From the NCBI RefSeq assembly GCF_032191835.1, contig NC_083236.1:70680001-70744000 (forward strand): DNA of 64,000 nt, given 5' to 3'. Of this stretch, positions 10,626 through 64,000 are shown piece after piece. Every line of letters starts with the position of its first letter. The first letter of the stretch is position 1. The notes beneath the pieces are model-generated. The model had not been told where the DNA came from. It did no database searches and saw only the letters and a program-made list of their open reading frames with translations. Source of the stretch: Heteronotia binoei (taxonomy: Eukaryota). The position numbers and the translations under genes are program-made.

Positions 10626-10641
10626 TTCCAGACAGTATTCA

Positions 10642-10647
10642 TTTATT
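10642..10647 (-). terminator. Candidate CHMP1A polyadenylation signal
   Basis: TTTATT on + (AATAAA on -) about 1.2 kb past the stop, at the end of the unique sequence just before the CR1 remnant. Confidence 0.45.
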
Positions 10648-11858: not shown

Positions 11859-22355
<10,497 letters not shown>

Positions 22356-37500: not shown

Positions 37501-44196
<6,696 letters not shown>

Positions 44197-44929
44197 GCCT
44201 CTTGTATGGCATGCAGAAGTGGCACAGCACATGCACGTGGGGCAAAATTTGCCTCAGAAGGAGCCGGAGCCTGTCACGGGCGGAAGAGAACCCTCCCCTG
44301 CTGTCTGGGGCTTCCCGAATGTCTCGGGGTTTCTAGGAACAGACAGAAGGATAACCTCACTGGATGCCAGCCGGCATCCTCTTGCTGGGTTTCCCTGGAC
44401 ACTGATCAGCAGGGCGCGACGGTGCCAGCCGCAGCACTGACAAGTGGATGGATCCTGCCCCTAAGCACATAACCGCACTTCACCATGAGCCATTCCTGCT
44501 GGCCACTGGGAAGTATTATATGGCCAGGCTATTCATTAGGTTACTTTGCGCAGTGGAAGGCTTTCTCAGGTGACATCCAGAGTTCTGGCTCTGAACCGTG
44601 CACCCTGCACAGCAGTATTGGAAACCATAGACAATGCAGGCAGCCAGTGCCTAGCCTGTCTCCCACAAATATGTCTAATCCCATTCAAGCCTATCTCCAG
44701 ACCTGGTGGCAATAGATACCATAAATTATGTGTTGTATGAAACTGCTTCCTTATGTCTGTGCTCAGTGCTTATTCTCCAGCTTTGTGGGTGATCCCGCAT
44801 CCAAGTATTATGGGAGAAGAGAAATTCCTATTTTCGTATTTGCTGACTCTCCCACACCTCTCAAACATAGTTCTAAAAACCTTCCTCATCTCAGTCATCT
44901 CCTCTCCCCTCCAAAAAACTGGAATCCCA

Positions 44930-45790
44930 GACCCTTCAGCCTTTTCACTAGGCAGCGTGCTTGGTGCCTTTAATTGCTTTTGTGTGCTTCCCCCTCGCTT
45001 AGGCTGCATTTCCAGTTCCATGAATCCTTTCCAAGAAGGGATGCTGCAATTATGCATAGTATTCCAAATATAGCAGTACCGTAGATCTATCTATACAAAG
45101 GGTGCTACTCTACTGGCTATTTTAGCGAAGAGTCTGGCTTTCTCACTCCCATCAACATTTTCATCTAGTTTTCCTCTGCAGCCTCAATTTCGCTCTCCCT
45201 TTCTGTCTCCACTACTTCAGACCCCTATCAGGGTATACTTAAAGTTAAGGGCTCTGTGCCCCAATCACTTCACACTGGCTTGCACTGCACCTCCTTTGCC
45301 ATGATACCTCTCATTCACCCAGCAGGGAGAGATCCTTTTGGAGTGTTTCACAAAGTTTTTTGTTTTTGCTGTACTGAATAATTCAATGTTAACCTGCAAA
45401 CCTGGCAGCTGCACTTCATACCCCAAACACCAGACCCTTTAAGGAGCTAAAAGAGCACAGTCTCCACTGTAAGGCCTGCTGGTTGCTCCTCACCTCTGCT
45501 TCTTGTTGTAACAAGCTATTAATTGATGACAGAACTCATCTTGCTATTCCACAAGTGCTAAATTTATTAATGGACCTTTGGTGAGAGACTTTTGTCAGGG
45601 TTTTTTGGTAAGCCCAAATAAATGCCTACCATCTCACTCTTATCCATATACTTATTAATCTTCTCAACAAACTCAGAATGCAGGTGAGGCAGACTTTCCC
45701 TTTGCAGAAGCCATGTTGATTCTTGCCCTGCAAGGCTTGTCCTTCCGTATGTGTGACATTTCACTTTCTGGTCCAGGTTTCCCCTAAACA
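44930..45790 (-). mobile_element. Old, degenerate CR1 ORF2 (RT) remnant
   Basis: LHSEFVEKINKYMDKSEMVGIYL resembles the CR1 RT segment (EF.E.V...VD....VD.VYLDF); many disruptions. Confidence 0.55.
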
Positions 45791-47796
45791 CCTTCAGCAG
45801 TGCTCCTCCTATGGTGGTTTTATTGATTTCTCTAGATAGTGCCCCCATTGCACTTTTTAGAAGCTCTTTGATAAAATATGGGTTAGAAACTCACACTAAA
45901 TTTCTGACAGCCAAATTCTGCCCCCACACAAACTCCCCCCCCCCCCCCCCAGGTAAACATTTCTTTCTGGCTCCAGCGAAATCATGGCACCCAGACACAT
46001 ACTTCCTAGGCACGGAAAAACTTTACATTTTGAAAACAACTTGGAAATACCGAGTTCTGACAAAAATATTCCAAGTGTTGGCAAATAAGCCTCGCACAGA
46101 AAATGAAGGCAAGTCAGCAAGAGGCACAGGGGCAGAGGCCGGAGCCTGCCCAACTGCAGCTCATTTTCCCTTCCCTTTCGAACGGACAGATGAGAGATGA
46201 CAAGAGAACTGCCCCTAACTCTGGGAGAAGCTGCAGGAATGCCCCATGATTGTCAAAGCAGCCGCTTTTCTGAGCACCAGCTGGGGGCCTGACTCCCCCC
46301 ACTGCAGCTCTCACGCGCAGGAGAACATGGGGCTACTTGTCAGCTCTCTCTGCAGCCCCCCCCCCCAATAATTTTGCAAGAAAGGCAATGGAGTCACAAC
46401 CAAGGACTTCTGCTGCTGCCGTGAGTCCTGTGAATGGAGGGAGGGTGTGAAAGTTGCTTCTCAGCTGGAGAAACAGACTCTGGCTGCCGAGGAAGCAGTC
46501 CTAGAAAGAGCCTCCCTCCCACCCAGCCATTGCACTTCTGCCCACTCAGGATGGGAGCTGGAGCTTTGCATCTGCAGCAGGCCCTGTTTGGGTGGGGAGG
46601 CGTCAGGCAGGGCTCGCAGCCCTCTTCCTAACACCATCCCGGCCCTCTTGCCCCACGATGTCCCTGCCCTGTCCAGATCAAAGGGTTGAAACGCCCAGCC
46701 TCCACACTGCCTGCTCCGTATCTTAGCAACCAATTCAAGCGGTAAAAAGCCACCCCCTTGAAACCCACCTCTTCGCCTGCCTGCCTGCTGATAATGCATT
46801 TTGTGGGCAACAGGAGATGGGGGTTGTTTCTGGACAGCCAGAACAGCAAGACTGGGAGCTGGTGTCAGATTCTGGTGCCCCCCTGTGTGAGTCTGTGGTA
46901 GGCAAGGCTCTCCAGCTTCCCCTGCTATCTTCTGGCATTTTCAGAACTACCTTGGAGATGGCCACTGCAGCAAATCGATTCTTTACTCTTCTGGTTTTCC
47001 TGTCCAGTTACAGAACTATCAAACACTCTGGTAGACAACCACTGGGCTTTTTTAAATGAGAATTTCAGCTCAAGATGAAAGTCCTTTTGCAGAAATTCTC
47101 CACTGACCCCCACATGGGGGGGGATAGCTAGGGAATCTGCCAGTTTCTTTTTAGTGTATTTCTCATTGTACTTTCTGCCAGATGTGGAACAAACGGCTGC
47201 CTTCTTGCACAACAACCAAGGCTGAGGGCCTCCTTTGAGAGTTATGTCATCAGACTACAACCAACATGAAGAACAACTGCCCCCATCCCCCCAAACCAGA
47301 GGAAGCCCCTCGATTTAGAGGAAGGGTCCCTTAGCCTCCCCTCTAATCTTGTGGCATCTCCACCCATTCCATGTAGGCAAGCAGAGCCTACCCCCTGGGG
47401 CGTTAGGATGTCTCTCGGCAAAACATTTGCACTCTGAAGGTGCAGAAGATGGACTTGGGCAAGCAGCCCCTCCCCCCAACTCCTGCTTGTTGAGAAGCAA
47501 GTGGAGCTCAGTGGGCTGGAGGGGTCCAGCAGGGTCACCGTGGGCGGGAGCAGCTTGCCCAATGAGCCTTCTGGATTCTCACCATGAAGCACCAGATTTT
47601 GGCACACATGAGAGGAAAGGAAATTCATCCAAAGAAGTGCCCACCTGTCCTCTTCCTTCCACATATTTTCAAACAGAGTTAGGCGAAGTCCCCTCGGGCT
47701 GAAAGGACGAGAGAGCCAAGCAGGAAGGATGAAAAGCGGGTTTAGTGGGGGCAGGCCCAGGTGTGCCCTCCCCCTCCCATGGCAGGCTCCGCCCTC

Positions 47797-49251
47797 CTAC
47801 AAGAGCTTGTCCACCTCTGTCCGCTGCAGCCAGAGGCGCTGCTGCTTCTCGCTCTGCAGCTCTTCGACGTGGTGGGCGCTGCGACAGTGCTGGGCCATCT
47901 CGCAGCCGCTGCCATGCAGCAAGCGGCAGCTGCCGCAGCAGGAGGAAGGGAGCGCCCCCGGGAGCAGGCACGAGTGCAGATGGTAGCGGGGAGGCTCTGG
48001 GCCCATCACTCCTGAGACCAGCCCCTGAGCTCGCCGCAGGCCCAAGGGACTCAGCTGGGGACTCCGTGGCTGCCTGGCAGAAGGAGAGGCTGGGCTACTG
48101 GGGCTGCGCGGCTGAGGGCTGGAGCTGCCGTAGTGGGGGATGGGGGACAGGAACTGGCTTCCCGGCTGCACGGGGCTGGAGTCTGTGTCACTCAGCCTGC
48201 TGAGCTCCCGCCGCAAGGAGATGAAGGAGAAGGAGGTCTCCAGATCAGGCCCTTCGGAGGCCATGAGCCCATTCCCATAGGGCTGCTCCAGGCCAGGCCC
48301 CCACAGCTTGCTCCTGCCCTCCGGGAGGCCCTGGGGGCTCCTGGCATGCAGTTCCTTGCTCCTCAGCCTGGGGCTGCAGCTGCTGCGCTCATAGGGGGCA
48401 GGCTGATGCAGAGGCGGCAGCCTGGATCCTGGAGGCTCGCCATAACGGTTCGGCTCCTCGGGGCTCTCCCCATATAAGTCGACCCCATCGGCTGGCTCTG
48501 TGCAGAAGTCTTTGCCCCTGGGCCAACGAGCCAGGCTCTGCAGCTGGGCCACGCAGCCCTCCAGGCCGCCCCTGACCTCCCGGCGGGCCTGCAGCAGCTC
48601 TTCCGAGGAGATGCCACAGAGCTCTGTCTCCTCCACGATCTTGCCTAGGATTTCGCACTCCACCCGGGCGGCAAAGAAGCTGCAGGCGACGCGGAGGAGG
48701 CCGGCTCCCGGTGGCAGCTGAGAAATCACCAGGTGGAGGTTGTCTCTCTGGACATAGCCCATCCGGTGGAAACTCCTGGCGATGTCGGCCTCAGACAGCA
48801 CTCCTTGGAGGACGTGCACGTAGACGCCTGAGAAGGTCTGCAAAGGGAGACACCTGTCAGCCCCCCCCATGAGATGAGACAGAAGGACAGCCTGCTCTTA
48901 TGCCCACCCCCCCCAACTCCCAATAGCCCCAGCAGCGCTCACTTTTATGGTGCTAAATTCTTTCCGCCAGGGGAAGAAGTAGAGATTGACAGCCGCCAGC
49001 TCCAATACTTCAAAGGCTCTGCAGAGATTCTGGAGGGCCACGCCCAGGTCCAACTGTCCCCGCAGGGCCCCCGCGATCATGGCAAAGGTGTCTTCCCCTT
49101 GCAAGGCGCAGTGCAGCTCCGGCTCCTCCAGCAGCTGGCGCCACAGCACCTGTTTCAGGGAGGAGTCCGCGCACACGCCCATGTGGCCCCTGCGGAAGTC
49201 CCTCTCCAAGCAGCGCCGGTATTCCTCCTGCAGCGCAGCACCGGGATTCAT
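47797..49251 (-). CDS. SPATA2L: Spermatogenesis-associated 2-like (PUB domain plus C-terminal Cys/His zinc-finger-like region), 449 aa
   Basis: Exons 48943-49251 and 47797-48837, GT-AG. EYRRCLERDFRRG..AFEVLELAAVNLYFFPWRKEFSTIK|TFSGVYVHVL..FSFISLRRELSR..HSCLLPGALPSSCCGSC..RLWLQR matches SPATA2L. Confidence 0.95.
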
Positions 49252-52054
49252 CCTGCAGCAAAACAAAGGCCGAGGCCTGAGACCCTTCCTCTGCAGAACC
49301 TCAGCGGCATCCCACCTTCCCACAGCCTTTCAAGCCAGCGCTGCACACAGATAGGAAAGGGACCAGCGCACCATTTAGGCACAGCCACAGAGCACACGGC
49401 GACAAGCAGGCCTGTAGCCACTGGGAGGAAGGCCTTTGGGGGTCCCGCCCCTGACTTCTGGGTGAGGGCCCCCCAACTTGGGAGCCCCAACCGGCAGCCT
49501 CTGCTCCCCACCACCGCCTCCAACCTTCCTACAATCCAAATCATGCCGGAGAGAAGGCAAGAGCGGCCACTGGCCTTCCCTGCGTGGTTTATAGGCTGCT
49601 CCTGCCACCTCGCAGAGTGGTCAAGCAGCAGTACTGCAGTTTGAACTCTGCTCACGACCTGAGTTCTATCTCAGCGGAAGCTGGTTCAGGTAGCCGGCCC
49701 AAGGTTGACTCAGCCTTCCATCCTTCCAAGGTTGGTAAAATGAGTAGCCAGCTTGCAGGGGGGAAAGTGTAGATGACTGGTGAAGGCAATGGCAAATCAC
49801 CCCGTAAAAAGTCTGCTGTGAAAACATCACCCCAGAGTCGGAAACGACTGGTGCTTGCACAGGGAACCTTTCCTTTTCTGCCACCTCTCCTGTGTGATTT
49901 GGATTGGGGGAGGCCCTCAAGCCTTAGCAGCAGCGGAGAGCAGAAGCCACAGCCTCCACCACAGCTTGAAGGCCGCCCCCCTAAAATGATCCAAATCACA
50001 CTGGAGGGCTGGCAGAAGCATCTACAGCCTCCCGCCAACCAGCTGGTTGACAGGGGCTTTAAATGGCATGGAGAGGCCAGTGGGATGCTTCTGCCAGCCC
50101 TCCCGCGTGATCTGAATTGTTGGCAGGGGTGGCTTTTAAGCTACGGCCAGGACGGAAGGTGTGAGGGGGCACAGATGTTATTTAGGTGAGAGGAGGCTTT
50201 TTAAAAAATTCAGGTGCCCCCTGCTCCCTCCCACTACCTAAAAAATCCTAACTATGGCCCTAAAAAGGTCAAGGTAGTCCCCTGTGCAACCACCAGTCAT
50301 TTTCGACTCTGGGGTGATGTTGCTTTCACAATGTTTTCACAGCAGACTTTTGACGGGGCGGTTTGCCATTGCCTTCCCCAGACATCTACGCTTCCCACCC
50401 CCCCACCAAGCTGGGTACTCATTTTACCAACCTCGGAAGGATGGAAGGCTGAGTCAGCCTCGAGCCGGCTCCCTGAACCCAGCTTCCACCGGGATCGAAC
50501 TCAGATCATGAGCAGAGCTTAGGACTGCAGTACTGCAGCTTTACCACTCTGCACCCCGGGGCTCTGCATCACGGGGCTACGGCCCTGGTGACAAGTAAAT
50601 CCAAATCCAGTCCTTAAAAGTCTTCTAACCTAAACGACATCCCTGAAGCAAGCAGCACATGCAGAGGGAGGGCACCTTGCAGACCTGTTGCTACTTTCTG
50701 TGCACTATGCTCGGCACACCGAGCTTTTAAAATTCACTAAAAACATTAATTAGTCACCTTTCTCCCATACAGAGCTCAAAGTAACTTGCAGTATATAAAC
50801 AAAAGACATAAAATAACAATTCAGGCCTGTTGAAGACTGACAGTGAGGGGGCCAGGTGCACCTCCCTGGGAGGCTGTTCTACGATCATGGAGCTGCCACT
50901 GAGAAGGCCCTCTCTCATGCGCCCACCAGATGAGCAGCTCCGTTTGGAGGGACAGTCAAGAGAGCCTCTCTCTGCTGTCTTTACTCCAGGGCAGGAATAT
51001 ATGGGAGAAGAGGGCCTTTCGGTCTGCACAGAGCAACGTGGTGGCACAGGCAGGGGGCAGCCCATGCAGCAAGCAGGGAGACCTTGCTGCACACACAAGC
51101 TCTGTGGCTGGACCACTCTGCAAGGCCCCTGCTGACCTTCAGCAGCCACAAGAATCCAAACATTCCCTTTTGTTTCATAAAGGCCCAGGTCATCCAGTTC
51201 TCCATGACACTTCAGGAGTGTGAAGCTCATACTGGAGGACACCTCCACAGTCACCATTGTCATGTTCACCCAAGCAGTTGCAGCCCCACATTTGCTCAGC
51301 TGTCCTCCCATTTGTTTCCCCAAGTGATGGCTTATTTTCATTCTTCTAAAACTTCCAACACAACTGCAACCCCTGCAGTCTGGAGCTATTAGTCATTCAA
51401 CCGACCTGCATGTTGGGGCCCAAACTGGCTTGCTTTCCTCTTCATTTCCCGCCCCCTTTTTCCTTTGGAGATTGAGTTGTAAGCTCAACTTTGGAGATGT
51501 TTCTCCCCCCTTTTTCTTTTGGAGATGTTACTTTGAGTTGTAAACCACTCTGAACGTGGTGGGCAAAATGGTGGAATGCAAATGTACCAAATATGTAAAG
51601 ATTCAGCAGCTTATTTGCTTGAGATGGCAAGTGAGTGGTAACCCCGGCCTTTCAGCCTCACCTGAGACCCACCGTGGTGTACTGGCTAAAGTGCTGGAGT
51701 GAGATCTGGGAGAGCCAGGTTCGAATCTCCACTCTGGCACAAAAGTTCGCTGGGTGGCCTCGGGCCCATCACACTCTCAGCCTAGCCCACCTCACAGGAC
51801 TGTTGTGAAGGTAAAACAAAGGTGAGAAGAATGGTGTGGGCTGCTTTGGCTCCCCACTGAAGAGAAATGCAGGGAATAAGTGAAGTAAGTAAGATCTATA
51901 CCACCATCCCTTCGCATGCTCTGAGGAAATGAGAAAGCTGCCGGTTTTGCTATAGGCTGATGGGACTTTGTCTCAAACAAAAGTCTCCCCCCCCCCCCCC
52001 GATCCAGCCACAGCAGGCGAGGGAAGGGGGGCTTGCTCAACTGGTTATCTCTCC

Positions 52055-52270
52055 ACATATGAAGCTGAAGCTGCCTTCTACTTTATCAGACCCTCTTTAG
52101 TCCATCAAAGCCAGTCTTGTCAATCAGACTGGCAGCGGCTCTCAAGGGACTCAAGCTGAGGTTGTCCACGCCTACTTGCCTGGACCCTTTTCAGTTGGAG
52201 ATGCCGGGGATTGAACCTGGGACCTTCTGCTTCCCAAGCGGATGCTCTACCACTAAGCCACCATCCCTTA
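52055..52270 (-). mobile_element. tRNA-derived SINE with CR1-like tail
   Basis: Same family as 2022-2460. Confidence 0.75.
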
Positions 52271-52602
52271 CTTCCTCTTGCACCCAGGTGGGACCAGGAG
52301 GGAGAGAGGGAACCCAGCAGCCAGCCTGGGAGGGGGGAACTTCCCTGCTTGACCCCCGCCCACCTCCGCAGTCCTTCATGGCCGCATCGCACAGTTGGTT
52401 TGGGGTGGAGGGTGTTCCAGCCTGGCTTTTTGTGGTCTTCTTCCGAGGCAACCAAGTAAGGAGCTCCCAGCTCCTGGGCAGGCTCCCAAAATCCGTGGTG
52501 GCTGCATGAAGGCAGGCAAAGCAAAGCCCCCCAGGGAAGCCAAGGGGGCCCCGTCTGGGCAAGGGCAAGCGTTGTGGTGGGGGGACAGGCCGGCTCCCTT
52601 CT

Positions 52603-53285
52603 CATAGAATCACAGAGTTGGAAGGGACCTCCAGGGTCATCTAGTACAACCCCCTTCACAAGGCAGGAAACTCACAAACACCTCCCCCTAAATTCACAAG
52701 ATCTTCATTGCTGTCAGATGGCCATCTAGCCTCTGTTTAAAAACCTCCAAGGAAGGAGAGCCCATCACCTCCCGAGGAAGCCTGTTCTACTGAGGAATCG
52801 CTCTAACCGTCAGGAAGTTCTTCCTAATGTTGAGCTAGAAACTCTTTTGATTTAATTTCAACCCACTGATTCTGGTCCTAACTTCTGGGGCCACAGAAAA
52901 CAATTCCACCCCATCCTCTCTATGACAGCCCTTCAAGTCCTTGAAGATGGTGATCCTATCACCTCTCAGCTGCCTCCTCTCCAGGCTAAACATGCCCAGC
53001 TCCTTCAACCTTCCCTCGTAGGATTTGGTCTCCATCTTCGTCGTCCTCCTCCGGACCCCTTCCAGCTTGTCTAGATCCTTCTTAAAATGTGGTGCTCAAA
53101 ACTGAACACAAGACTCCAGGTGAGGTCTTACCAGAGCAGAATAAAGCAATATCACTACTTTTCACGATCTGCACACTAGACTTCTGTTGATACAGCCCAG
53201 AATCGCATTGGCCTTTTTAGCTGCTGCATCACACTGCTGACTCATGCTCAGCGTATGGTCCACTAAGACCCTTTTCGCACAGACT
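52603..53285 (-). mobile_element. CR1 LINE 3' fragment
   Basis: METKSYEGRLKELGMFSLERRQLRGD..FKDLKGC..LFSVA; ATTCT tail. Confidence 0.88.
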
Positions 53286-53329
53286 ACTGCAATACTTCTC
53301 ATACTCCGCCGCCCGGGGAGCCTTGCTAG

Positions 53330-53850
53330 GGGCTTCTCCCTACAGAAGAGGCCAGCGGAGGGCCGGCACCGGCGGAACCTCCTGCCACAGGACCCCTGCG
53401 GCCACTTCAGCCCCGCCTCCCAGAGCAGAGCGGCGCGGCGCCCCTGGCAACCGAGGAGGGGGGGGGAGAGAGCGAGAGACGCACCTGGGGCACGTGACCG
53501 GCCGCTGACGTCACACTCGCCTTCAAGGGGGGCGCCTCGCCGGAGCCCGGCCGCTCCGCCGCCAGCCCCTGGCTCTCCTCTCCGTCTCGCCTCCGCTCGG
53601 CCGCCGTCACTTCCGGTCCCACTTGGCTCCGCCCCCGAGTGCTACGTCACGCGCCCGGGCATTAACCCGTTCCGCGCCACCTCTCTCCATGGGATCCCGG
53701 AGGCGCCTCACGGAGCATGCGCGGCTCGGAGGAGTCGCCTGGGCGGGAAGTTGGCGTGCGCACGTGCAGGCGGCAGGCTGGAAGCCCCGCCCCCGAAAGA
53801 GCGTTGCCAACCTCCCGGTGGGGCTTGCAGATCTCCTAGCGGAGATGAGT
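53330..53850. promoter_or_regulatory. CpG island containing the likely non-coding first exon/promoter of SPATA2L, divergent to the SDR-like gene
   Basis: Minus-strand donor CAG|GTGCGT at 53485/53484; E-box CACGTGAC 53491-53498; CRE TGACGTCA 53506-53513; ETS ACTTCCGG 53609-53616; GC boxes. Confidence 0.7.
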
Positions 53851-53900
53851 TCCCCTGGAGAAAGGGCCCGCATAGGTGGGTGGGTTCTAAGGGCTGTGGT

Positions 53901-54375
53901 TAGGGTTGCCAATCCCCAGGTGGGGGCAGGGTTTGGAGGCCCTCCCCCCGCTTCAGGGTCATCAGAAGGCAATGGTGGGGAGGAAAATGCCTGCTACACA
54001 CTCCATTATTCCCTATGGAGACTGATCCCCGTAGTAGGGTACAATGGAGAATTCATCCGTGAGTATCTGGGGCTCCATTGGGCTGTTTTTGAGGTAGAGG
54101 CACTACACTTACAGCATGGCATCCGGTGCCTCTCCTCAAAACACTCTCCAAGTTTCAAAAAGATTGGCCCAGGGGGTCCAAATCTATGAGCCCCCAAAGA
54201 AGGTGCCCCTATCCTCCATGATTTCCAATGGAGGGAAGGCATTTAAAAGGTGTGCTGTCCCTTTAATGTGATGGCCTGAACTCCCTTTGGAGTTCAGTTA
54301 TGTTCATCGCAACCTTGCTTCTGGATCCACCCCCAAAGTCCCCAGATAGTTTTTGAATTGGACTTGGCAACCCTA
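53901..54375 (+). mobile_element. hAT MITE (TAGGGTTGCCA family), full length
   Basis: TIRs TAGGGTTGCCAA / TTGGCAACCCTA; perfect TSD GCTGTGGT (53893-53900, 54376-54383). Confidence 0.92.
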
Positions 54376-55262
54376 GCTGTGGTCCTTCCTTCATCCCTGC
54401 TCCCTAGATCTCCGACGTTTCCCATCCAGGGGATGGCAGCCATATTTCCCAAGGAGCATTTTTACCCAGAAATAAAGCATTTCATGCACAACTGCTGGTT
54501 GTGGGGAGGGAGAAACATTCCTGCACACCTTGAGCACAAGCTGCCAGATCTTCCACAGGGACCAGGTGCTGGGGGGGGTGCGATCCCCCATCACCTCCTC
54601 AAAGCTGGACCCTCCTGAGCATGCTGGACCCAATCCTGCCACATCTGTCTGTGGCTTGTAAGACGACACTGTTTCAGGGAGCATTTAACTGCAATGCTGA
54701 CCACCGGCACCAAGACGCTAGATCCAATGGATGCTTAAGATCATTAAATACCATCTTAAATCTGTATTTAAACTAGCACCAAATTATTTTTAAACTGTTT
54801 AATGCTTTTAATGTAAATGTTTTTTATTGTAAGTAATGTATTGTGGGCTGCCCTGAGCCTGCTTTGGCAGGGAGGGCGGGATATAAATCCAAATACATAA
54901 ATAGAGAAGCTCCTTTTGAGCTATTCTGACAAAAGATGTACTGCGGCCCTCTGCAAGCCCTGCGGTCATTTCATTTCGCCCAGAGAAGCGGAGCTGACAG
55001 CAAAGGAAAGAGCAGCCTGCCCTCCTGCCTTTGTGTCTGCCACTCTCTGGGGGACCAACACAGCATCCGTCTGCCCAAGTCCTGAGGCCAGCAGAAGGGG
55101 AGAGGGGAGGGCAGGGGAAGGGTGGTGGGTGTGCCTTGGAGGTGGAGCTCTCAGAGGCTTGCCCTGTTTCTTCTCCTGCCTGGGATCTGCTGCCCCACTT
55201 TCCAACAGTGGCCCTCTCCTGAGCAGAGGGATCTCTCGCTCGTTCTCTCTCTGCTTTCTGGG

Positions 55263-58200
55263 ATGTCTGTATCTGAGCGGGTGGCGGTGGTGCTGGGGGG
55301 AGCTGGCACAGTGGGCTCGGGGATTGTCAAGTCGCTGCTGGAGAAAGGTAAGGACCATTTTGTCAAAACGCTTCTCTCCAGACAGGGCTTGGTCTGGTGA
55401 AGAGTGTGTGGATGCAGGTGCAAAAGATGTGCAAACACTTCCTGTGTTCATCACAGGCCCCACCTGTCTCGCACCAGCTGGCTTTCTTTGTCATCCTGCA
55501 GTCGGCCAGCTGTTTCTGCAAAAAGGTGCTGGAGCTTGGCAGCTCTGAGCCTCTGACCTCAGATGATTGTGTGTTTCCATGTGTTGGAGGACTCACTGTG
55601 GCCAGTGTATGGGCACATTCCTAGAGGCATTCTGCTCTGTTCCAACTCCCTCCCCCCACCCCACCCCCAGAAAAAGCTGGTCTTGATCCTCTACCCATCT
55701 TTACAGGCTTCCAGGTTGCCGTTATCTCCCGGGATGGAGAGAGACTGGAGAAACTCAAACAGTTCTTGTCGCCATCACTCCAGAACCGCTTGCACACCCT
55801 CGTGGGGGATGTGGGTAAGGGCTTGTGCCATTGCTGCTAGGTGGGCAGTGGCAGGCAGGCAGCTTTGTCTGTGGTAAAGAGAGCCCCCTGGCTCACAAGC
55901 ACATTTGGGGGGGAGGGATTGGGGAGGCAGGCATGGGTGGGCTGGGCACCAGCAGGGCACTCAGCCAGCCTGTTGCCCACCCATGCCTGCTTCCCATTCC
56001 ATGTTGTGGTTTGGAGTTGGCCGCCGGAGGGGGCGTTGTGGGCGGGTAAACACAAAACTGGAGGGCACTTCCTAATTGGGATTTCCAAGCAGTTCCCCTT
56101 GAAATCCAGGCAGTTTTGTAAAGAAGATTATGCCCCATTGTTGCAAAGTACAGTGTATCAAATGGCCACTCCCCCTTTTCAGTAGCACCTAATAATTTAG
56201 ATGTCTAAATACAATATCATGAAGATAAGTGTGAATGCAAAAACAACTATTGAATTGGGAGAAATCTTTTAATTTTCTTGAATTTCAGATAAGTCCAGTG
56301 AACACCTTCCTAGCCAGAGCAGGTTTCAGGTTGTGCCCTCCTCTTTATCAGACTTCAAGCCCTGAGGGCTCCATGGAGGAAAGCAGATTCATGGGGGCAG
56401 GAGCTGCTTCTAAACAGAGGCTAGACGGCCATCTGACAGCAATGAGGATCCTGTGAATTTAGGGGGAGGTGTTTGTGAGTTTCCTGCATTGTGTAGGGGG
56501 TTGAACTAGATGACCCTGGAGGTCCCTTCCAACTCTATTATTCTTGTCTAGAGCCCCTCAGCCAATGGGCTGATGTGGGAATCGTGTCCCCAGAGCAGAT
56601 ATACGTGCCCTCCCGTGGATGTAGAAAGGGGGAAATTTGTCTCAAAGATGAACTGGCACTGTTTCTGCCCAAATCTCTGCTGTTCCTCCCTCTCCGTGGG
56701 AGATGCGGGTGAAGGCAGTGGAATGTCTTCCCTCCAGGTTCTGAAGAGGGAGCCGAAGCAGCCAGAGAGGTGATCCTGAAGACCCTGGGGAAGGTGACAG
56801 ATGTGGTGTCCTGCCTGGGCTTCAGCTGGTGGCAAGAGGGGCCACCCCACACCCAGTCACTGGAGGAACTGCAGCGGGTGAGAAGGGGGCAAGGCGAGGG
56901 GGGGTGCTGCTCATCCTCAGGCAGAGGGGGTCAGTGGGGAGGGCTGAGCCTCGGAGCTAAGAATCTCTGGTCCACATTCTGTCCTGCAAAGCTGGTGGGG
57001 GGCAGGGGCTGCCCATCTGCAGGGCTGGCATTTCCTGGAGGAGGAGTCAGAGCTCTGCCTCAGAGATGCTTCCACCTGGGGAGCACTTACACCCCACACC
57101 TGGCTCCCCCCTCCCCACAGGTCTTGGACATGCTGCTTTTCAGCACCTTCACTTCCTGGAAGGCTTTCTTCCCCCTAGTCCGGGACAACCCCAGCGGCTC
57201 CTACACCCTCATCACAGGTGAGAAGAAGATGATATTGGATTTATATCCTGCCCTATACTCTGAATCTGAGTCTCAGAGAAGCTTACAGTCTCCTTTATCT
57301 GCTTCCCCCACAACAGACACGCTGTGAGATAGGTGGGGCTGAAAGAGCTCTGACAGAAACTGCCCTTTCAGGGACAGCTCTGCCAGATCTAGGGCTGACC
57401 CAAGGTCATTCCAGCAGCTGCAAGTGGGGGAGTGGGGAATCAAACCCCGTTCTCCCAGATAAGAGAGCTCTGGCTGACCCAAGGCCATTCCAGCAGGTGC
57501 AAGTGGAGGAGTGGGGAATCACACCTGGTTCTCCCAGATAAGAGAGCTCTGGCTGACCCAAGGCCATCCCAGCAGCTGCAAGTGGAGGAGGGGGGAATCA
57601 AACCCAGTTCTCCCAGATAAGAGAGCTCTGGCTGACCCAAGGCCATTCCAGCAGCTGCAAGTGGAGGAGTGGGGAATCAAACCCCGTTCTCCCAGATAAG
57701 AGAACTCTGGCTGACCCAAGGCCATTCCAGCAGCTGCAAGTGGAGGAGTGGGGAATCAAACCCCATTCTCCCAGATAAGAATCTGCGCACTGAACCACTA
57801 CACCAAACTGGCTCATCTCACCAAATAGACATGTTCAGAGATGCTCATCGCTTTCCACACGCAGGAACTAAATTGGTGTGTTCTGTCACTGCATGCCTGG
57901 ACACATGAGCAGGGAAGTGCCACTCCGCAGCTGGAACGGAGAGGGCAGCTGCAAGCCCTGTGCCCTCGGGCTGGGGCGGAGCACGTTGATGGCACGGACT
58001 GAATGGCATGCTATCGAGTGACAAAGGGGAGAGGATCCATCTCCCACTCGCTCATCACTGTGCCCTCTTTCCAAAAAGTAACAGTTGGGCACTGAGCCTG
58101 CCTCGGCAGGGAGGGCGGGGAATAAATAAAAATTTATTATTATTATTATCTCCATTCCAGGAGGGGCTGGGGAGCGTCTCCTGCTGCCAGGCACTGGTTT

Positions 58201-59634
58201 CCTGACCCTGGGGGCAGCAGGGGCTCTGGCCTTCTGCCGGGTGCTGCGCGAGGAGTACCCAGAGATTCCCTGCAAACTGAATGAGGTCAGTGGTGAGCCT
58301 GAGTCGGCCTTGAGGGGTTGGGTGGGTTTCCTTTCCTGGTCTTTTCAATGTTTGCAGGATGCTTCAGGTGTCTTCGTCCTGCTAGAAACGACAAAAGGCA
58401 TGGGGGGGGGGCGGTCCCCAGCCAGACTCAGTTAAGGCTGCTGCATCCAAGGAGCTCATGATGTGCTGAGTGCTCTCAAATTCAGCCTCCCCCCACCATG
58501 ACTGTTGAAGACACAGGAAGGAAGCTGACTTCTACGGAATCTTGGCCCATCCAAGTCAGCTTTGTCTACTCAGACTGGCAGCAGCTCTCCAGGGTTTCAG
58601 GCAGAGAGAGGTCTTTCCCATCACCACCTAGCTTAGGGGTGTCGAACGCATTTGTTATGAGGGCCGAAATTGATATAAATGAGACCTTGCCGGGCCAGGC
58701 CATATGCATACCTATTCAAGATTAGGTAGCAGAGATATAAACTTTATAACGGACACAAACAAACACAATTAAATGTTTTTTTAAAAAAAAAATTAAAACA
58801 TGCTTAAAACATTAGCACTCGTTGGTCTTAAAGATGCTTTCTTTGTATTTCTCCCATGGGATCCGGGGAACTGGGCAAAGGAAGCTCTGGCTCTTTCCTT
58901 CCCTCCCCAGGGGACCTGGAAGGGGAGGAGCCTCAGCCAATAGAAGGAAGAGAGGCTTGGCTCAGTAGTCTACTGGGCAATTGAGCAAGCTTTGCAAAGC
59001 AAGCAGCAATGCAGAATGAAGCAAGAGAGAGGGAGAAGGAAGCAGATAAGAGTCAGTTGCTCGGGGGCCTGATTCAGGCCCCGGGCTGGTCCTTTTTAAC
59101 TGGAGCAGATAAGAGTCAGTTGCTCAGGGGCCTGATTCAGGCCCTGGGCTGGTCCTTTTTAACTGGAGCGTTTGCCGAGGATTGAACCCAGGACTTTTGC
59201 ATGCCAAGGAGAGGCTGTTCCCCTGAGTCACAGCTGCTTCCTCTGAGGAAATTTGCTGGGGGAGGCAAATGTCATTTCAGCCCCCCCCCCCCCCCGGGGG
59301 GACTGAAGGTTTTTCTGGCTTTAAGAAAACAGCCGCTCTAATATACAGTGGGTTGGTCCCACTAAGCCGCAGCTACAAGAAGGATGGGGGGTTTGCAGGT
59401 CTCAGAGTCTCTCCGGCCCAGTTGGCATCCCCCCTCCTTTGTGTGCCCCTGCAGGTGAAGATTAACATGGGGGTGACAACACCAGAGCGCCTGGGCCGCC
59501 CGGGCTACGTGAGCCACCTGGAGGTGGGCGAGGCAGTGGCCTCCCTGGTGGAGAAGAGGCGCGTCTCCCATGCGGTGTTGACTGCTGGCTCACCTGCCGA
59601 CCTCAGGACCCTCACCATGGAAGGGCAACTGTGA
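55263..59634 (+). CDS. Uncharacterised atypical SDR/Rossmann-fold protein, 244 aa
   Basis: Six GT-AG exons 55263-55347, 55707-55814, 56738-56877, 57121-57217, 58161-58285, 59455-59634 (735 nt) splice with consistent phases and no stops. N-terminal VAVVLGGAGTVGSGIVKSL dinucleotide-binding motif, LVGDVG, DVVSCLG, SYTLITGGAG. Candidate AATAAA at 60930-60935. Confidence 0.88.
57223..57812 (-). repeat. tRNA-SINE containing a 5x79-bp internal tandem array (SDR intron 4)
   Basis: Units start 57385, 57464, 57543, 57622, 57701. Confidence 0.9.
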
Positions 59635-60211
59635 GGAGGCATCACTCCCCCTCACCCAGAGGGCTCTGCAGCAGCACCCACCCCTCCTGACCCTCCTGCT
59701 GATCCTCCCTCAGACCTTGGGGCTGGGCCAAGTTGGGGCTGTCTGGTTCTCTGCCCTCGAGGGTCCCTTCTCCCCAGCTGTAGCACCGAGGCAGGGACTC
59801 ACAGTCGGAAAGGTGCATGAACAACTCAGGAAAACGAGCAAGAGACACGACTTCAGTTTGGAGCAAGGACAGGCTAGAGTGGGAGGGGGGAGAGAGCTGG
59901 GACAGTCTGATCGCCCCTTCCTCATTCCCCTCAGGGATTCATTGCCCCCAATCCCCCACCCTGTTTACAGGGCTAGCTAGTGATGTTGTATCCAGGTTGC
60001 CCCAGGAGCTGTAAAAAGAAGCGCAGCGTTCAGCTTGCTTGCTTTCCCAGTAGTTAGGGGGAAGAAGAAAGGCCAGGCAAGATGCCAGAGAACCCACACA
60101 GCTGGCACAAATAGCTCTGTTCCTAGCAGCAACGGTGAGAAAGGAGCCCCCCCCCCACTTTACTCCAGAAAAGGAGTGTGGTTGGTTTTCTTTCTGTTGA
60201 AGTTGTCATAT

Positions 60212-60648
60212 AATGAACCTCTGAAGCTGCCTTCTACTGAATCAGACCCTGGGTCCATCAAAGTCAGCATTGTCTACTCAGACTGGCAGCGGCTCTCCAG
60301 GGTCTCAAGCTGAGGTTATTCACACCTATTTGCCTGGACCCTTTTTAGTTGGAGATGCCGGGGATTGAACCTGGGACCTTCTGCTTACCAAGCAGATGAT
60401 CTACCACTGAGCCACCATCCCTCCCCAAATATGAACATAAGAAGCCGCCTTCTACTGAATCAGACCCCCCTGGGTCCATCAAAGTCAGTATTGTCTACTC
60501 AGACAGGCAGCAGCTCTCCAGGGTCTTCAGCTGAGGTTTTTCATGCCTACTTGCCTGGACCCTTTTGAATTGGAGATGCCGGGGATTGAACCTGGGACCT
60601 TCTGCTTCCCAAGCAGATAATCAACCACTGAGCCACCGTCCCTCCCCA
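60212..60648 (-). mobile_element. Tandem dimer of the tRNA-SINE with CR1-like tail
   Basis: Two consecutive copies; reverse complement of the 2022-2460 family. Confidence 0.78.
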
Positions 60649-62271
60649 AATGTCAGTAATGACCAGCCAGACAAAGCTGCATTTCAATGAGGCCCCTCTC
60701 CAGCCGGTCTTCACTTGCACCTCGGGTGGATCCATGCCTTTCTGTATTGCCCTAGCCCCGAGCAATGCACTGTACTCCCAGGCCTCCCCCGGACACCCCC
60801 TCCCCCCCAGTCTTTCTCTGTTCCAGGGCTGTGGCAGGTGGCCCCTCAAGCGTGGAAGGGGCAGGATCTCTTGAGAGTCCTGGTGTAGCACCTCTTCCGT
60901 TCCCCTGGTCATGTTATTCTGCACCAGTTAATAAACGTTTCCTGCTATTTCATGGACCCTGCCTACTCTCTCTTGTGGGTTTTTGCAGAGCTGGGTGGAC
61001 ACTGCTTGCGGGGGGTGGGGGAACATCTGCAGGTGGCATTTCGGGGCAAGGGGGGGAGTGTTGGCAAAGAGGAACATCTTTGTAAGCATTTAACAGCTTT
61101 AAAAGATATTGGGTTTATATCCTGCCCTATACTCAGAATCTCAGAGCAGTCACAATCTCCTTTATTTCCTTCCCCCACAACAGAAACCCTGTGAGGTGAG
61201 TGTGGCTGCCCTTTCAAGGATAGAGTCTCGGAGCAGCCTACAATCTCCTTTCCCTTCCTCCCCCGCAACAGACACCCTGTGAGGTGGGTAGGGCAGAGAG
61301 CTCTGACAGAAGCTGCCCTTTCAAGGACAACACCTACGAGAGCTATGGCTGACCCAAGGCCATTCCAACAGCTGCAGGTGGAGGAGTGGGGAATCAAATC
61401 TGATTCTCCCAGATAAGAGCCTGTGCACTTAACCACTACACCAAACGGGCTCTTACCCAGACTTGGCACTGCAGCAGTTTACATGCACGCGTCCAGCAAC
61501 AGTTGTCCAAAGAAGTGGCTGCAGAGACTGACAAAAAGCTCCTCTCCTGCCGCCACCAATTTCCAGAGTCTTGAAGGCGCTCCTGGGTTCTGGCTCTTTT
61601 TCCACCGCTTCAGACAAAGACGGCTGCCTACCTTGATTGATCTACAGCAACCCATCTCAGTCACTCTGGGGGCAGTCAGAGAAATACAGGAGGTCTGGAG
61701 ACTGTTCTCATCCAGGCTCCCTGGCGTGCTTAATCCTTGCCCCCCCCCCCGCCCAGAAAGTACGTGCCTTTGGGCAGGGAAGGGAAGAGTGTGAGAATGA
61801 GAAGCATCCCAGCTCTGGAGCCAGTGGCCCAGACAGGAGGGTAAGTGGCAGCGTGGGGAGGGGCGGAAGAAACACAGGAGGCAGATTCTTCTTCAGGAAT
61901 TTCCTCTTTAGAACACTGCCATGATTCATGCACCCGGAGGCATTTGGAGCCTACTGGGTCACTCAGCAAAGGCAATCTCCAGTACGGGGGAGTGGTCAGG
62001 CTGCCAGACCCTCTGGCCCTGGAAGCTCATTGGTTGACTCTGGGCCAGTTGCATCCTTCAGCCTCACCTACCTCAAAGGGTCGTTGTTTGAGATAAAACA
62101 GAGGGAGAACACTGCAAACCACTTTAGGGGCATTCTACCGGGGGGGGGGGGGAGCGGAGGGCCCAAATTAAATAAACATCACAGTTCTTGTTTTTCAAGA
62201 TGCCGCTGTTGTTAGTTAATTGCAGCTTCTTTCTTGGCTTTTATCTTTTGAAAAACCCTAATTCTAGGAAA

Positions 62272-62571
62272 AGAGCCCTGTGGTGCAGAGTGTTAAAGCT
62301 GCAGTACTGCAGTCCCAAGCTCTGCTCACGACCTGAGTTCAATCCCCGGTGGAAGCTGGGTTTTCAGGTAACCAGCTTGAGGTTGACTCAGCCTTCCATC
62401 CTTCCGAGGTCAGTAAAACAAGTACCTGGCTTGCAAATGGGAAAGTGTAAATGACTGGGGAAGGCAAGGACAAACCACCCCATAAAAAGTCTGCCGTGAA
62501 AACATCGTGATGTGACGTCACACCAGAGTTGGAAGCGACTGGTACATGCACAGGGGACTACTCTTTACCTT
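62272..62571 (+). mobile_element. Sauria-SINE-like element with long TSD
   Basis: TAATTCTAGGAAA duplicated at 62259-62271 and 62572-62584. Confidence 0.85.
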
Positions 62572-64000
62572 TAATTCTAGGAAAGCATTCTTCCAGCTCC
62601 AGACCTTGATTTAACCTGTCCTCTGCTCTTCTTCTTCAGGAATTTCCTCTTTAGAACACTGCCATGATTCATGCACCCGGAGGCCCACAAGCTCTGTTAT
62701 TTCCTTCTCCCCTTTCCCCTTTCCAAGGCCCACAAGCTCTGTTATTTCCTTCTCCCCTTTCCCCTCTTCAGCTCTGCTGCTGGTTCCCTGCCTCCTGTGC
62801 TGTCAATGCCTCCCCCCCCCCCACTAACAGCAGGCCTGGCACGGAACCCAACTTATCCTTAGCTGTACAGGCTGCAAAGTTTCCCCCCAAAAGGTGGGGA
62901 AAGGCCACAGCAGTGGTTGCTGGGAATGCTCCAGGGAGCCACAAAAAGCGAGGGACTCCCAGTGGGCACGTGGGTCACTACCTTCCAGGAATAGTTTCCC
63001 AAAATGCAACGAATCAGCTTTCTTTTAAAGACCAGGCTCCTCAAGCTTATGTTGCCTTAAGAGGAAAAGGGGGCAGCTGGCAGAAAAAGCGCTTCTTCCC
63101 ATCCCAACCCCCCATTCCCACAGAACAGATTCTGGGGCAGGCTGCAGACATGGCCTTTATTATGGACTTGCCTCAAGAGTGAAGAGGATACAGGTCAGGC
63201 AGGGAAGCGTCACAGGGCCGGAGAACACACCGCAGCTGCTGGCTCTTCACCGCTTCCCAGAAGGGGCCAGCAGCAGCTTCTGCTTCCGCTTCCCAGCTCT
63301 CAGCACTGCTGAGTCTGGGCACGTGGAGGACACCCGGTCCTTTCCCCTGCTGTGGCCCAGGCAGGCAGCACAAGGCCTCCCCCCAGAGTCAAGCGGCATT
63401 CCCGCATAACATGGCACGGGGGACTCCAGGTGCCATTTGGCTCAACAGCAATTCCGGGACATTTCCAGCGGCATCGCAAATTCATTCAGTGTGGACAAGG
63501 TCCTTTGCTTTTCAAATGATGCAAATTCTCACTAGGAGCCCTCCTCTCCCAGCCCCGCCCCACAAATCCAGCCACCATCTTCAGTATTTGTTCACAAAAC
63601 AGCGTCTGTAGCCCCCACACAGTTTCAGAGAAGGCGAATGAGCAGAGAACACCACATTCTTCCTTGTGAGTGTCTGTGCATTTTCTCTCTCCTCCACACA
63701 CAGTCCAGAGAGCCACTGCAGTGTGGCAGTTCTGGTGCCAGACACGGCTCTGCGACAGCCCCCTTCAGCTCCCCACACAGCCTAGAAGCTTGGGGGGGGG
63801 GTTACCTGGGGCCAGTCTCAAACACTTCACCTAGTCTACCTCACAGGCTGAGTGGAGAACGGTGGCCTCCACTGGGAAGACAAGGGGGGAACCAATACAG
63901 TAAATAATAAATAAAAGTGTTGCCTTCTGGGCCAGCCGTCTCCCCCCTAGCTCTCGGCTTCCCACAGACAACTCCCAGTGTCAAGTGCAGGGCAGCAGGA

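What the first reader, a model, noticed from the sequence alone, without database searches (positions are those of the whole stretch)
55263..59634. Intact six-exon atypical SDR-fold gene lacking the catalytic YxxxK, absent from the human locus
Seen: six canonical exons splice into MSVSERVAVVLGGAGTVGSGIVKSLLEKGFQVAVISRDGERLEKLKQFLSPSLQNRLHTLVGDVGSEEGAEAAREVILKTLGKVTDVVSCLGFSWWQEGPPHTQSLEELQRVLDMLLFSTFTSWKAFFPLVRDNPSGSYTLITGGAGERLLLPGTGFLTLGAAGALAFCRVLREEYPEIPCKLNEVKINMGVTTPERLGRPGYVSHLEVGEAVASLVEKRRVSHAVLTAGSPADLRTLTMEGQL. Known: classical SDRs have a Gly-rich motif, an NNAG motif and an Asn-Ser-Tyr-Lys tetrad, and human SPATA2L is followed directly by VPS9D1. Inference: the Gly-rich motif and beta3 'GDV' are kept, and 'ISR' at the end of beta2 hints at NADP(H). 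NNAG is replaced by SCLG, the Ser site by TGG and YxxxK by PGTGFLTLG. This could be a non-catalytic NAD(P) sensor (NmrA-like) or an enzyme with different chemistry, lost in mammals. Intact frame despite TE-filled introns implies selection.
Basis: partly seen in the sequence, partly recalled or inferred. Interest (0 to 1): 0.75.

Follow-up and report, generated by a model that had tools for sequence, protein, structure and literature searches.

The report
Conserved SDR-fold gene without catalytic residues
This is a real, selected six-exon gecko gene for a small NADP-binding-type protein that has lost every classical catalytic residue; the family is annotated but unstudied from sharks to marsupials, has bacterial relatives, and no annotated protein turned up in placental mammals or birds.

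Summary
Six GT-AG exons at 55263-59634 (+) encode the stated protein. Each exon matches, in order, the 243-aa Gekko kuhli orthologue, which lies between SPATA2L and VPS9D1. Exon-wise dN/dS against it is 0.17, and all 70 family-invariant residues are kept.

The gene is already annotated, under placeholder names only, in sharks, ray-finned fish (zebrafish si:dkey-238o13.4), lungfish, amphibians, turtles, alligator, lizards, platypus and marsupials. No placental or bird protein was found. "Lost in mammals" must therefore be narrowed.

It is a classical SDR fold (Pfam adh_short; AlphaFold pLDDT 88). The Gly-rich motif and an NADP-type Arg after strand 2 are kept. The Asn-Ser-Tyr-Lys tetrad is replaced by Thr(Met here)-Gly-Phe-Gly. 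The same loss, plus a shared SLG-x-WWQ motif, marks a large older clade that includes bacteria. That clade has no solved structure, no dedicated model in Pfam or NCBIfam, and no functional paper in the held library.

The function is inferred, not shown. Classical dehydrogenase chemistry is ruled out. I lean slightly to an NADP(H)-binding regulator over a non-canonical reductase.

The joined protein was never built.

The parts
55263..55347 (+). Exon 1 (codons 1-28 plus the first base of Gly29); ATG at 55263
   Evidence: 28/28 residues identical to Gekko kuhli P0001; donor GT
55296..55322 (+). Gly-rich dinucleotide-binding motif G12-G-A-G-T-V-G-S-G20
   Evidence: these positions are invariant in 42 orthologues
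55707..55814 (+). Exon 2 (codons 29-65, split codons at both ends)
   Evidence: AG/GT borders
55727..55732 (+). Ser36-Arg37 at the end of strand 2, the NADP 2'-phosphate position
   Evidence: aligned with the Arg of the NADP-dependent SDRs 1yxm, 1vl8 and 3l77; Arg in 109 of 119 clade representatives
56738..56877 (+). Exon 3 (codons 65-111)
56809..56835 (+). S-C-L-G in place of NNAG, followed by F-S-W-W-Q, the clade's signature loop
   Evidence: W95 in 88 and W96 in 87 of 119 clade representatives; aligned with bacterial 'SLG-GWWQG'
57121..57217 (+). Exon 4 (codons 112-143 plus the first base of Gly144). Met115 (57130-57132) sits at the tetrad Asn site. Gly144, at the catalytic Ser site, is the split codon 57217 + 58161-58162
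   Evidence: the Ser site is Gly in 109 of 119 representatives
58161..58285 (+). Exon 5 (codons 144-185)
   Evidence: 40/41 residues identical to P0001
58187..58213 (+). P-G-T-G-F-L-T-L-G: Phe157 (58199-58201) at the catalytic Tyr site and Gly161 (58211-58213) at the Lys site
   Evidence: alignment to 3l77; all invariant; no Tyr at this site in any of 119 representatives
59455..59634 (+). Exon 6 (59 codons plus TGA). It carries one extra Arg codon (59497-59499) relative to the orthologues read

Best explanation
Shown: this is the gekkotan orthologue of an annotated but uncharacterised jawed-vertebrate gene (zebrafish si:dkey-238o13.4; 'uncharacterized protein LOC...' elsewhere). It lies head-to-head with SPATA2L and is under purifying selection. 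It encodes a protein of about 244 aa with a classical short-chain dehydrogenase/reductase (SDR) fold. The cofactor-side motifs are kept: GGAGxVGxG, Ser-Arg after strand 2 (the NADP type), and GDV. The whole Asn-Ser-Tyr-Lys catalytic tetrad is replaced, by Thr (Met in this window), Gly, Phe and Gly. The family belongs to an old clade, with bacterial, algal, sponge and tunicate members, defined by the same loss and by a conserved SLG-x-WWQ loop and a PGxG loop around the former active site.

Inferred: the protein still binds NADP(H) but cannot run the classical SDR proton relay, so it is not an ordinary alcohol/ketone dehydrogenase. My committed reading, at about 40%, is a non-dehydrogenase NADP(H)-binding protein that reports or uses cofactor occupancy through protein contacts, functionally like HSCARG or NmrA. 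The reason is that nearly the whole sequence is frozen across 42 orthologues from chimaera to marsupial (79% mean column identity), and no replacement acid/base residue is evident at the site. A non-canonical NADPH-dependent reductase is almost as likely, at about 35%.
For: Gene model and orthology: with the same exon borders in opossum and shark. Synteny is SPATA2 / SDR / VPS9 in Gekko kuhli and kinase / SPATA2 / SDR in an opossum, and the window is colinear with the Gekko locus. Selection: dN 0.045, dS 0.268, ratio 0.17 over 240 codons; 70 invariant columns, all kept in the window. Fold: adh_short at 56.4 bits against a cut-off of 26.6; AlphaFold2 pLDDT 87.7 and pTM 0.89; Foldseek TM about 0.75-0.78 to classical SDRs. 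Tetrad loss. Wider clade: 2484 hits, 504 of them at E<=1e-10; hhalign of the vertebrate profile against the bacterial profile gives 100% probability, E 1e-47, over 231 columns. Arg37 is kept in 109 of 119 representatives, which argues that NADP(H) binding matters. Spliced mRNA exists for an orthologue: a 1046-nt Logan contig carries an uninterrupted CDS. The gene appears in fish RNA-seq tables (PMC4556936, PMC5752677). Precedent for an NADPH sensor on an SDR-type fold: HSCARG (titles and abstracts of PMC4690889 and PMC3602244, listed).
Against: There is no experimental datum on cofactor binding, partners or activity for any member. The clade is common in bacteria as a stand-alone gene without a conserved partner, which is more typical of enzymes than of sensors. 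The most conserved clade-wide motifs (WWQ, Gly144, PGxG, Ser/Thr159) line the former active site, which also fits catalysis or small-ligand binding. The Lys that normally anchors the nicotinamide ribose is missing, so even cofactor binding is only inferred. The structure model is of the Gekko kuhli orthologue, not of the window's own joined protein.
Confidence: 0.4

Rival explanations
1. It is a non-canonical NADPH-dependent reductase. Hydride is transferred from NADPH to a substrate that needs no Tyr/Lys acid-base pair, for example a planar or activated acceptor such as a flavin, quinone, bilin or enoyl-thioester. The substrate would be held in a widened hydrophobic/aromatic pocket made by Gly144, Phe157, Gly161 and the Trp-Trp loop. 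From my own knowledge, BLVRB works this way without a Tyr-Lys dyad.
For: The triad-less clade is widespread in bacteria as single genes. Active-site-proximal motifs are the ones conserved across the whole clade. The NADP-type Arg37 is conserved. One bacterial member sits in a MarR / SDR-like / FMN-reductase gene row and another lies near OsmC, which are weak hints of redox-stress chemistry. The loops at residues 91-100 and 146-153 are modelled with low confidence, as substrate-ordered loops often are.
Against: No polar catalytic candidate is conserved clade-wide at the site. The bacterial contexts are inconsistent across the five members looked up, seven contigs in all. No solved or characterised member exists. 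The very high whole-sequence conservation in vertebrates is unusual for a small-molecule SDR enzyme; that judgement is my inference.
Confidence: 0.35
2. It is a catalytically dead structural subunit that pairs with an active SDR in a hetero-oligomer, as in BbsC/BbsD, the petunia benzaldehyde synthase beta subunit, or the HSD17B8/CBR4 complex.
For: Helices E and F, which form the usual SDR dimer interface, are among the most invariant stretches (residues 121-131 and 156-168). Inactive SDR subunits are documented (PMC13418739 and the references in it).
Against: No second SDR gene lies next to it in the gecko, in the stretch of the opossum locus fetched, or in any of the five bacterial members' neighbourhoods. 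A pure scaffold would not need the conserved NADP-type Arg37. Documented dead subunits usually keep most of the tetrad, for example PhBS-beta, which lost only Lys.
Confidence: 0.1
3. It is a decaying or non-functional gene, or an annotation artefact, in this genome.
For: This window has Met at the near-invariant position 115 and one extra Arg codon in exon 6. Expression in this species is unverified.
Against: The frame is intact, all splice sites are canonical, dN/dS is 0.17, and all 70 invariant residues are kept. Met115 is also seen in the skink Lerista.
Confidence: 0.03

Closest known systems
Vertebrate orthologue group of zebrafish si:dkey-238o13.4 (NCBI 'uncharacterized protein LOC...'; auto-named 'peroxisomal trans-2-enoyl-CoA reductase-like', 'HSD17B14' or 'L-fucose dehydrogenase-like' in some species)
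   Same: 65-97% identity, about 243 aa, the same six-exon structure and the same SPATA2L neighbour. The window's gene is a member.
   Different: Very little. This copy has one extra Arg codon in exon 6, Met at position 115, and the gecko-shared changes S90C, G98E and F141L. The borrowed enzyme names are similarity labels and no function has been tested. Only two papers in the held library mention the gene, both in differential-expression tables.
Classical SDR enzymes (Pfam PF00106 adh_short), e.g. PECR 1yxm, HSD17B14 1yde, Thermococcus ADH 3l77, gluconate 5-dehydrogenase 1vl8
   Same: The fold, the length, the Gly-rich motif, the Arg after strand 2 as in NADP-dependent members, and the general helix E and strand 6 patterns.
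   Different: About 20-24% identity only. NNAG becomes SCLG, and the Asn-Ser-Tyr-Lys tetrad is entirely replaced. The sequence match to PECR ends at residue 138, before the active site. The C-terminus (-GQL here; -GKL, -GKI, -GKV or -KNL elsewhere) is not a conserved SKL-type peroxisomal signal; the definition of that signal is from my own knowledge.
NmrA / HSCARG (NMRAL1) NADP(H)-sensing atypical SDRs
   Same: A Rossmann NAD(P)-binding domain without the catalytic Tyr. This is the working model for how a triad-less SDR can act, namely cofactor-dependent protein interactions (papers listed).
   Different: Not the same family. The Pfam NmrA score is below threshold and covers only the N-terminal Rossmann start. 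This protein is a 243-aa classical-type SDR, not a roughly 300-aa two-domain protein.
BLVRB (flavin / biliverdin-IX-beta reductase), an SDR-type reductase without the Tyr-Lys dyad (from my own knowledge, not tested here)
   Same: An NADPH-type Rossmann protein that would catalyse hydride transfer without the classical dyad.
   Different: No detectable specific sequence relationship was seen. It does not appear among the PDB sequence or fold hits listed.
Inactive SDR subunits of hetero-oligomers (BbsC, PhBS-beta, HSD17B8 in the KAR complex)
   Same: An SDR fold with a crippled catalytic set.
   Different: Those usually lose one residue and sit beside or bind an active paralogue. Here all four residues are gone and no partner gene is adjacent.

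Membership tests
SDR superfamily, classical type (Pfam PF00106 adh_short) | Profile match above the curated threshold | tested here: met
   The orthologue P0001 scores 56.4 bits against a cut-off of 26.6, and the shark and wombat orthologues also pass. Single exons of the window are too short to score.
SDR superfamily, classical type (Pfam PF00106 adh_short) | Rossmann fold of about 250 aa with an N-terminal Gly-rich motif | tested here: met
   The AlphaFold2 model has pLDDT 87.7 with the beta-alpha-beta order. Foldseek gives TM 0.73-0.78 to classical SDRs. The motif lies at 55296-55322.
SDR superfamily, classical type (Pfam PF00106 adh_short) | Asn-Ser-Tyr-Lys catalytic tetrad (YxxxK) | tested here: not met
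   These positions map to Thr115 (Met in the window), Gly144, Phe157 and Gly161. The Pfam match ends at profile position 140 of 195.
SDR superfamily, classical type (Pfam PF00106 adh_short) | NNAG motif after strand 4 | tested here: not met
   It reads S-C-L-G here and S-S-L-G in most orthologues.
Vertebrate si:dkey-238o13.4 orthologue group | High full-length identity, shared exon structure, and a position next to SPATA2L | tested here: met
   There are six exon-wise HSPs to P0001 and 221 of 240 aligned codons are identical in amino acid. Exon borders are the same in opossum and shark. Synteny is shown.
NmrA-like family (Pfam PF05368) | Profile match above the curated threshold over the two-domain, roughly 300-aa architecture | tested here: not met
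   Scores are 16.8-23.9 bits against a cut-off of 27, and only residues 6-47 or 6-89 match.
NmrA-like family (Pfam PF05368) | NAD(P) binding with no catalytic Tyr, and regulation through a protein partner | not testable with these tools
   The absence of Tyr is shown. Cofactor binding and partner binding need experiments.
Peroxisomal trans-2-enoyl-CoA reductase (PECR), the name NCBI gives some orthologues | Full-length similarity including the active site | tested here: not met
   The best PDB sequence hit is 1yxm, but it covers only residues 6-138 at E 1e-10 and shows 21-24% identity by fold alignment.
Peroxisomal trans-2-enoyl-CoA reductase (PECR), the name NCBI gives some orthologues | C-terminal peroxisomal targeting tripeptide | tested here: inconclusive
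   The window ends -GQL and orthologues end -GKL, -GKI, -GKV, -KNL or -GEL. This is not a conserved SKL-type signal, but weak variants cannot be excluded from sequence alone.
Inactive SDR subunits of hetero-oligomers | An active SDR partner, usually encoded next to it, and a hetero-oligomeric assembly | tested here: inconclusive
   No adjacent SDR gene is seen in the gecko locus, the fetched part of the opossum locus, or five bacterial members' neighbourhoods. Assembly state cannot be tested here.
Triad-less 'SLG-x-WWQ' SDR clade (defined here; no dedicated model found in Pfam or NCBIfam) | Gly at the Ser site, no Tyr or Lys, Arg37, Trp-Trp after SLG, and full-length profile homology | tested here: met
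   Residue counts over 119 representatives are. hhalign of A1 against A2 gives 100% probability and E 1e-47. No NCBIfam model reaches its cut-off and no PDB member exists.

The most novel reading that the evidence does not exclude
The SLG-x-WWQ, triad-less SDR clade is a functionally new class of NADP(H)-binding protein. It would be either a redox-state reader or a reductase with an acid/base-free mechanism in a Trp-lined pocket. It has been kept almost unchanged in jawed vertebrates for over 400 million years, and its annotated protein is independently missing from placental mammals and from birds. If so, a nearly invariant vertebrate protein with no human counterpart has gone unstudied.
Probability: 0.3. 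Interest if true: 0.65.

Novelty: new variant of a known kind. Interest (0 to 1): 0.45.

Why it matters
The gene as such is not new, because it is annotated in many genomes. What is new is the reading. It belongs to an unusually well conserved vertebrate protein family (79% mean column identity from chimaera to wombat) that is an SDR by fold but has none of the SDR catalytic residues. It also shares that state and a Trp-Trp signature with many bacterial proteins. No paper in the held library, solved structure or curated model addresses it. Because no placental protein is annotated, it has escaped the human- and mouse-centred literature. The family is easy to test in zebrafish or Xenopus. Such work could add a case to the short list of SDR-fold cofactor sensors or non-canonical reductases. 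The apparent parallel loss in birds and placentals is a small evolutionary puzzle.

Tried and rejected
1. Pfam on single exons gave only sub-threshold noise (Epimerase 12 bits, SRC-1, TMEM61), because the exons are too short. The contiguous exon 3-intron 3-exon 4 reference solved this in the word search.

3. Bacterial gene neighbourhoods as a clue to function gave no recurrent partner across five members (seven contigs). The neighbours were MarR + FMN reductase; OsmC; DsbA / DUF1275 / DinB; MFS; and GH1 + ECF sigma.

With the single protein P0173 it returned only its own Bacteroidota MAG and one distant hit.

5. Multi-domain relatives (HECT-SDR and SDR-ankyrin in sponge-like models; a double SDR in Spirogloea) look like merged gene models or tandem SDRs and gave no functional hint.

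6. A relocated Tyr/Lys pair was considered, since Tyr139, Tyr176, Lys125 and Lys182 are invariant. By alignment they sit at generic structural positions: the start of strand 5, the end of helix F, the helix E 'K/R-x-x-x-P' pattern, and the 'R' of IRVN. So I rejected it as unsupported, but without model coordinates this is inference.

7. A peroxisomal (PECR-like) reading was rejected (see the membership test).

8. Read-through of intron 3 (243 nt, open in frame) as a coding insertion was rejected, because the Gekko kuhli intron is 214 nt, which is not a multiple of three.

9. Literature searches by zebrafish name and by six LOC identifiers found no functional study.
Full report
**Method limits**

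- Searches used single exons by reference.
- They also used the contiguous stretch window:56740-57216, which is exon 3, intron 3 (which happens to be open in frame) and exon 4.
- Database orthologues, mainly Gekko kuhli P0001, served as proxies.
- The structure model is therefore of P0001, not of the window's own product.
- No human sequence was fetched or compared.

**1. The observation**

The sequence shows an ATG at 55263 and six exons: 55263-55347, 55707-55814, 56738-56877, 57121-57217, 58161-58285 and 59455-59634.
- The stop is TGA at 59632-59634.
- Every intron is GT...AG.
- tblastn of the 243-aa Gekko kuhli protein P0001 against the whole window gives six HSPs on exactly these exons, in order, covering residues 1-243. 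Nothing comparable occurs elsewhere in the window.

The model is correct.

**2. What it is**

A word search with the 159-aa contiguous reference found 116 relatives. They are full-length proteins of about 243 aa carrying Pfam adh_short.
- Taxa: geckos (97% and 94% identity over the matched part), turtles, lizards, tuatara, frogs, salamanders, lungfish, coelacanth, bichir, gar, bowfin, many teleosts, sharks, rays, chimaera and marsupials.
- A second search with the wombat protein added platypus (79%) and alligator (75%).
- That search showed no placental mammal and no bird among the best 120 of 201 hits. By identity, such orthologues should have ranked near the top.
- Source names are placeholders ('uncharacterized protein', 'si:dkey-238o13.4') or borrowed enzyme names ('peroxisomal trans-2-enoyl-CoA reductase-like', '17-beta-HSD 14', 'L-fucose dehydrogenase-like').

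Synteny and gene structure are conserved.
- In Gekko kuhli the gene lies between a SPATA2-family gene (minus strand) and a VPS9-domain gene (minus strand).
- In an opossum it follows a protein kinase gene and the SPATA2-family gene.
- The window is colinear with the Gekko locus from 44282 to 63927 and ends just before VPS9D1.
- SPATA2L is visible in the window as minus-strand ORFs at 47797-48870 and 48898-49323.
- Exon borders fall at the same residues in shark and opossum.

**3. Selection**

Forty-two orthologues align with 79% mean column identity and 70 invariant columns. All 70 are kept in the window.

Exon-wise Nei-Gojobori counts against Gekko kuhli were summed without joining sequences:

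| Measure | Value |
|---|---|
| Codons compared | 240 |
| Synonymous differences / sites | 43.2 / 191.7 |
| Non-synonymous differences / sites | 22.8 / 528.3 |
| dS | 0.268 |
| dN | 0.045 |
| dN/dS | 0.17 |

The gene is under purifying selection.

Evidence for splicing and expression comes from relatives only.
- A 1046-nt Logan contig carries an uninterrupted orthologous CDS, which shows that spliced mRNA exists in another species.
- The zebrafish and trout gene appears in liver and brain RNA-seq tables (PMC4556936, PMC5752677).

**4. Anatomy of the protein**

Pfam adh_short matches P0001 at 56.4 bits, but only over profile positions 1-140 of 195.

The AlphaFold2 model has pLDDT 87.7 and pTM 0.89. 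Its weak spots are residues 91-100 and 146-153.

Foldseek places it among classical SDRs at TM 0.73-0.78 and about 20% identity. The top hits are Q9HYA2, PECR, HSD17B14 and gluconate 5-dehydrogenase.

The family profile was aligned to solved SDRs, and the assignments below also draw.

| Classical SDR feature | This family (P0001 numbering) |
|---|---|
| Gly-rich motif | G12-G20, kept |
| Arg after strand 2 | Arg37, aligned with the Arg of the NADP-dependent enzymes 1yxm, 1vl8 and 3l77 |
| DV after strand 3 | Asp63-Val64, kept |
| NNAG | S-S/C-L-G |
| Tetrad Asn | Thr115 (Met in this window and in Lerista) |
| Catalytic Ser | Gly144 |
| Catalytic Tyr | Phe157 |
| Catalytic Lys | Gly161 |

**5. 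A wider clade**

An exhaustive profile search found 2484 relatives at E<=0.001, 504 at E<=1e-10 and 37 at E<=1e-30.
- Beyond the vertebrate cluster there are full-length matches from a tunicate, a sponge, a streptophyte alga, unnamed eukaryotic transcriptomes and many metagenome contigs.
- At least one of these is from a Bacteroidota MAG.
- The vertebrate and bacterial profiles align over 231 columns at 100% probability and E 1e-47.

Residue counts among the 119 representatives that cover the sites:

| Position | Residue found |
|---|---|
| Ser site | Gly in 109 |
| Tyr site | Never Tyr (Leu, Pro, Phe or Met) |
| Lys site | Mostly Ala or Gly (Lys in 5) |
| Arg37 | Kept in 109 |
| Trp95 / Trp96 | Kept in 88 / 87 |

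The catalytic loss is therefore ancient, not specific to this vertebrate family, and it comes with its own signature ('SLG-x-WWQ', 'PGxG').

No NCBIfam model reaches its cut-off. No solved structure belongs to the clade.

**6. How it may work**

What is shown: an SDR fold, retained cofactor-side motifs, no classical proton relay, and strong constraint.

What is inferred: NADP(H) is still bound, since Arg37 is conserved clade-wide, and the remodelled pocket is the functional site.

Two readings remain close.
- I lean at about 40% to a non-dehydrogenase NADP(H)-binding regulator or sensor, working like HSCARG or NmrA. The reasons are that nearly the whole vertebrate sequence is frozen and that no substitute acid/base residue is apparent.
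- A non-canonical NADPH reductase is about 35% likely. This fits the stand-alone bacterial distribution and the conservation of loops near the former active site.
- A dead scaffold subunit is less likely, at about 10%. No partner SDR lies nearby in any locus examined.
- A decaying gene is all but excluded.

**7. Comparison with the known, and novelty**

By membership the protein is a classical-type SDR that fails the family's catalytic criteria. It is not an NmrA-family member and not PECR.

The gene's existence is already annotated. The held literature has only two incidental mentions.

I rate it a new variant of a known kind, namely triad-less SDR-fold proteins. Interest is moderate: a highly conserved vertebrate protein with no annotated placental or bird counterpart and no known function.

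**8.

- It is retained in monotremes and marsupials.
- It also lacks an annotated protein in birds.
- It is not NmrA-like by family.
- TE-rich introns are not evidence of selection.

Noticed in passing
window 56878-57120: Intron 3 is 243 nt and open in the exon frame, so ORF callers read straight through it. This gives the ORF at 56770-57327 and the Logan 'proteins' P0008, P0021 and P0026. In Gekko kuhli the intron is 214 nt, so the open frame is a coincidence.
   Followed up: yes
window 57393-57780 (intron 4); further copies e.g. 8648-8920, 12232-12837, 13710-14258, 29213-29480, 34121-34378, 35806-36084, 42822-43026, 61223-61453: An interspersed repeat contains a 79-bp unit repeated 4.9 times at 94% identity. 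The same element occurs many times in the window and in the Gekko kuhli locus. It is probably a squamate SINE with a tandemly amplified core.
   Followed up: partly
window 59041-59169 (intron 5): A 63-bp unit is repeated twice at 96% identity.
   Followed up: no
window 53500-54000: This is the most GC-rich 500-bp bin (0.69) within 49000-60500. It lies between the minus-strand SPATA2L ORFs and the plus-strand SDR gene, and is conserved with Gekko kuhli at L001 7638-8035. It may be the SPATA2L promoter / first-exon CpG island, or a shared divergent promoter.
   Followed up: no
window 59497-59499: There is one extra Arg codon (GGC CGC CCG GGC) relative to the fourteen orthologues read, giving ...ERLGRPGY... 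where P0001 and P0002 have EHLGPGY and most others ERLGPGY.
   Followed up: yes
L001 (Gekko kuhli CM122951.1) 10001-13417: The NCBI protein name carries the tag 'UNVERIFIED_CONTAM'. Yet the gene has five introns and sits in a 69-Mb chromosome between SPATA2L and VPS9D1. It is not a contaminant.
   Followed up: partly
Proteins P0054/P0080 (Albula), P0085/P0096 (Gymnothorax), P0068/P0107 (Anguilla anguilla / A. rostrata), P0078/P0281 (Megalops): Two distinct full-length entries appear in Albula and Gymnothorax, a full and a shorter one in Megalops, and one in each of two Anguilla species. These elopomorph fishes may have kept two paralogues of the family.
   Followed up: no
Proteins P0131, P0146 (sponge-like), P0121 (Spirogloea): The triad-less SDR domain appears fused to a HECT fragment, to ankyrin repeats, or to a second classical SDR domain. 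The first two are probably merged gene models.
   Followed up: partly
L004 5517-7347 (metagenome contig): A bacterial clade member sits in a same-strand row of MarR regulator, triad-less SDR, FMN reductase and a small ORF. This is the only context that hints at redox-stress chemistry, and it was not repeated in the other four members looked up.
   Followed up: partly
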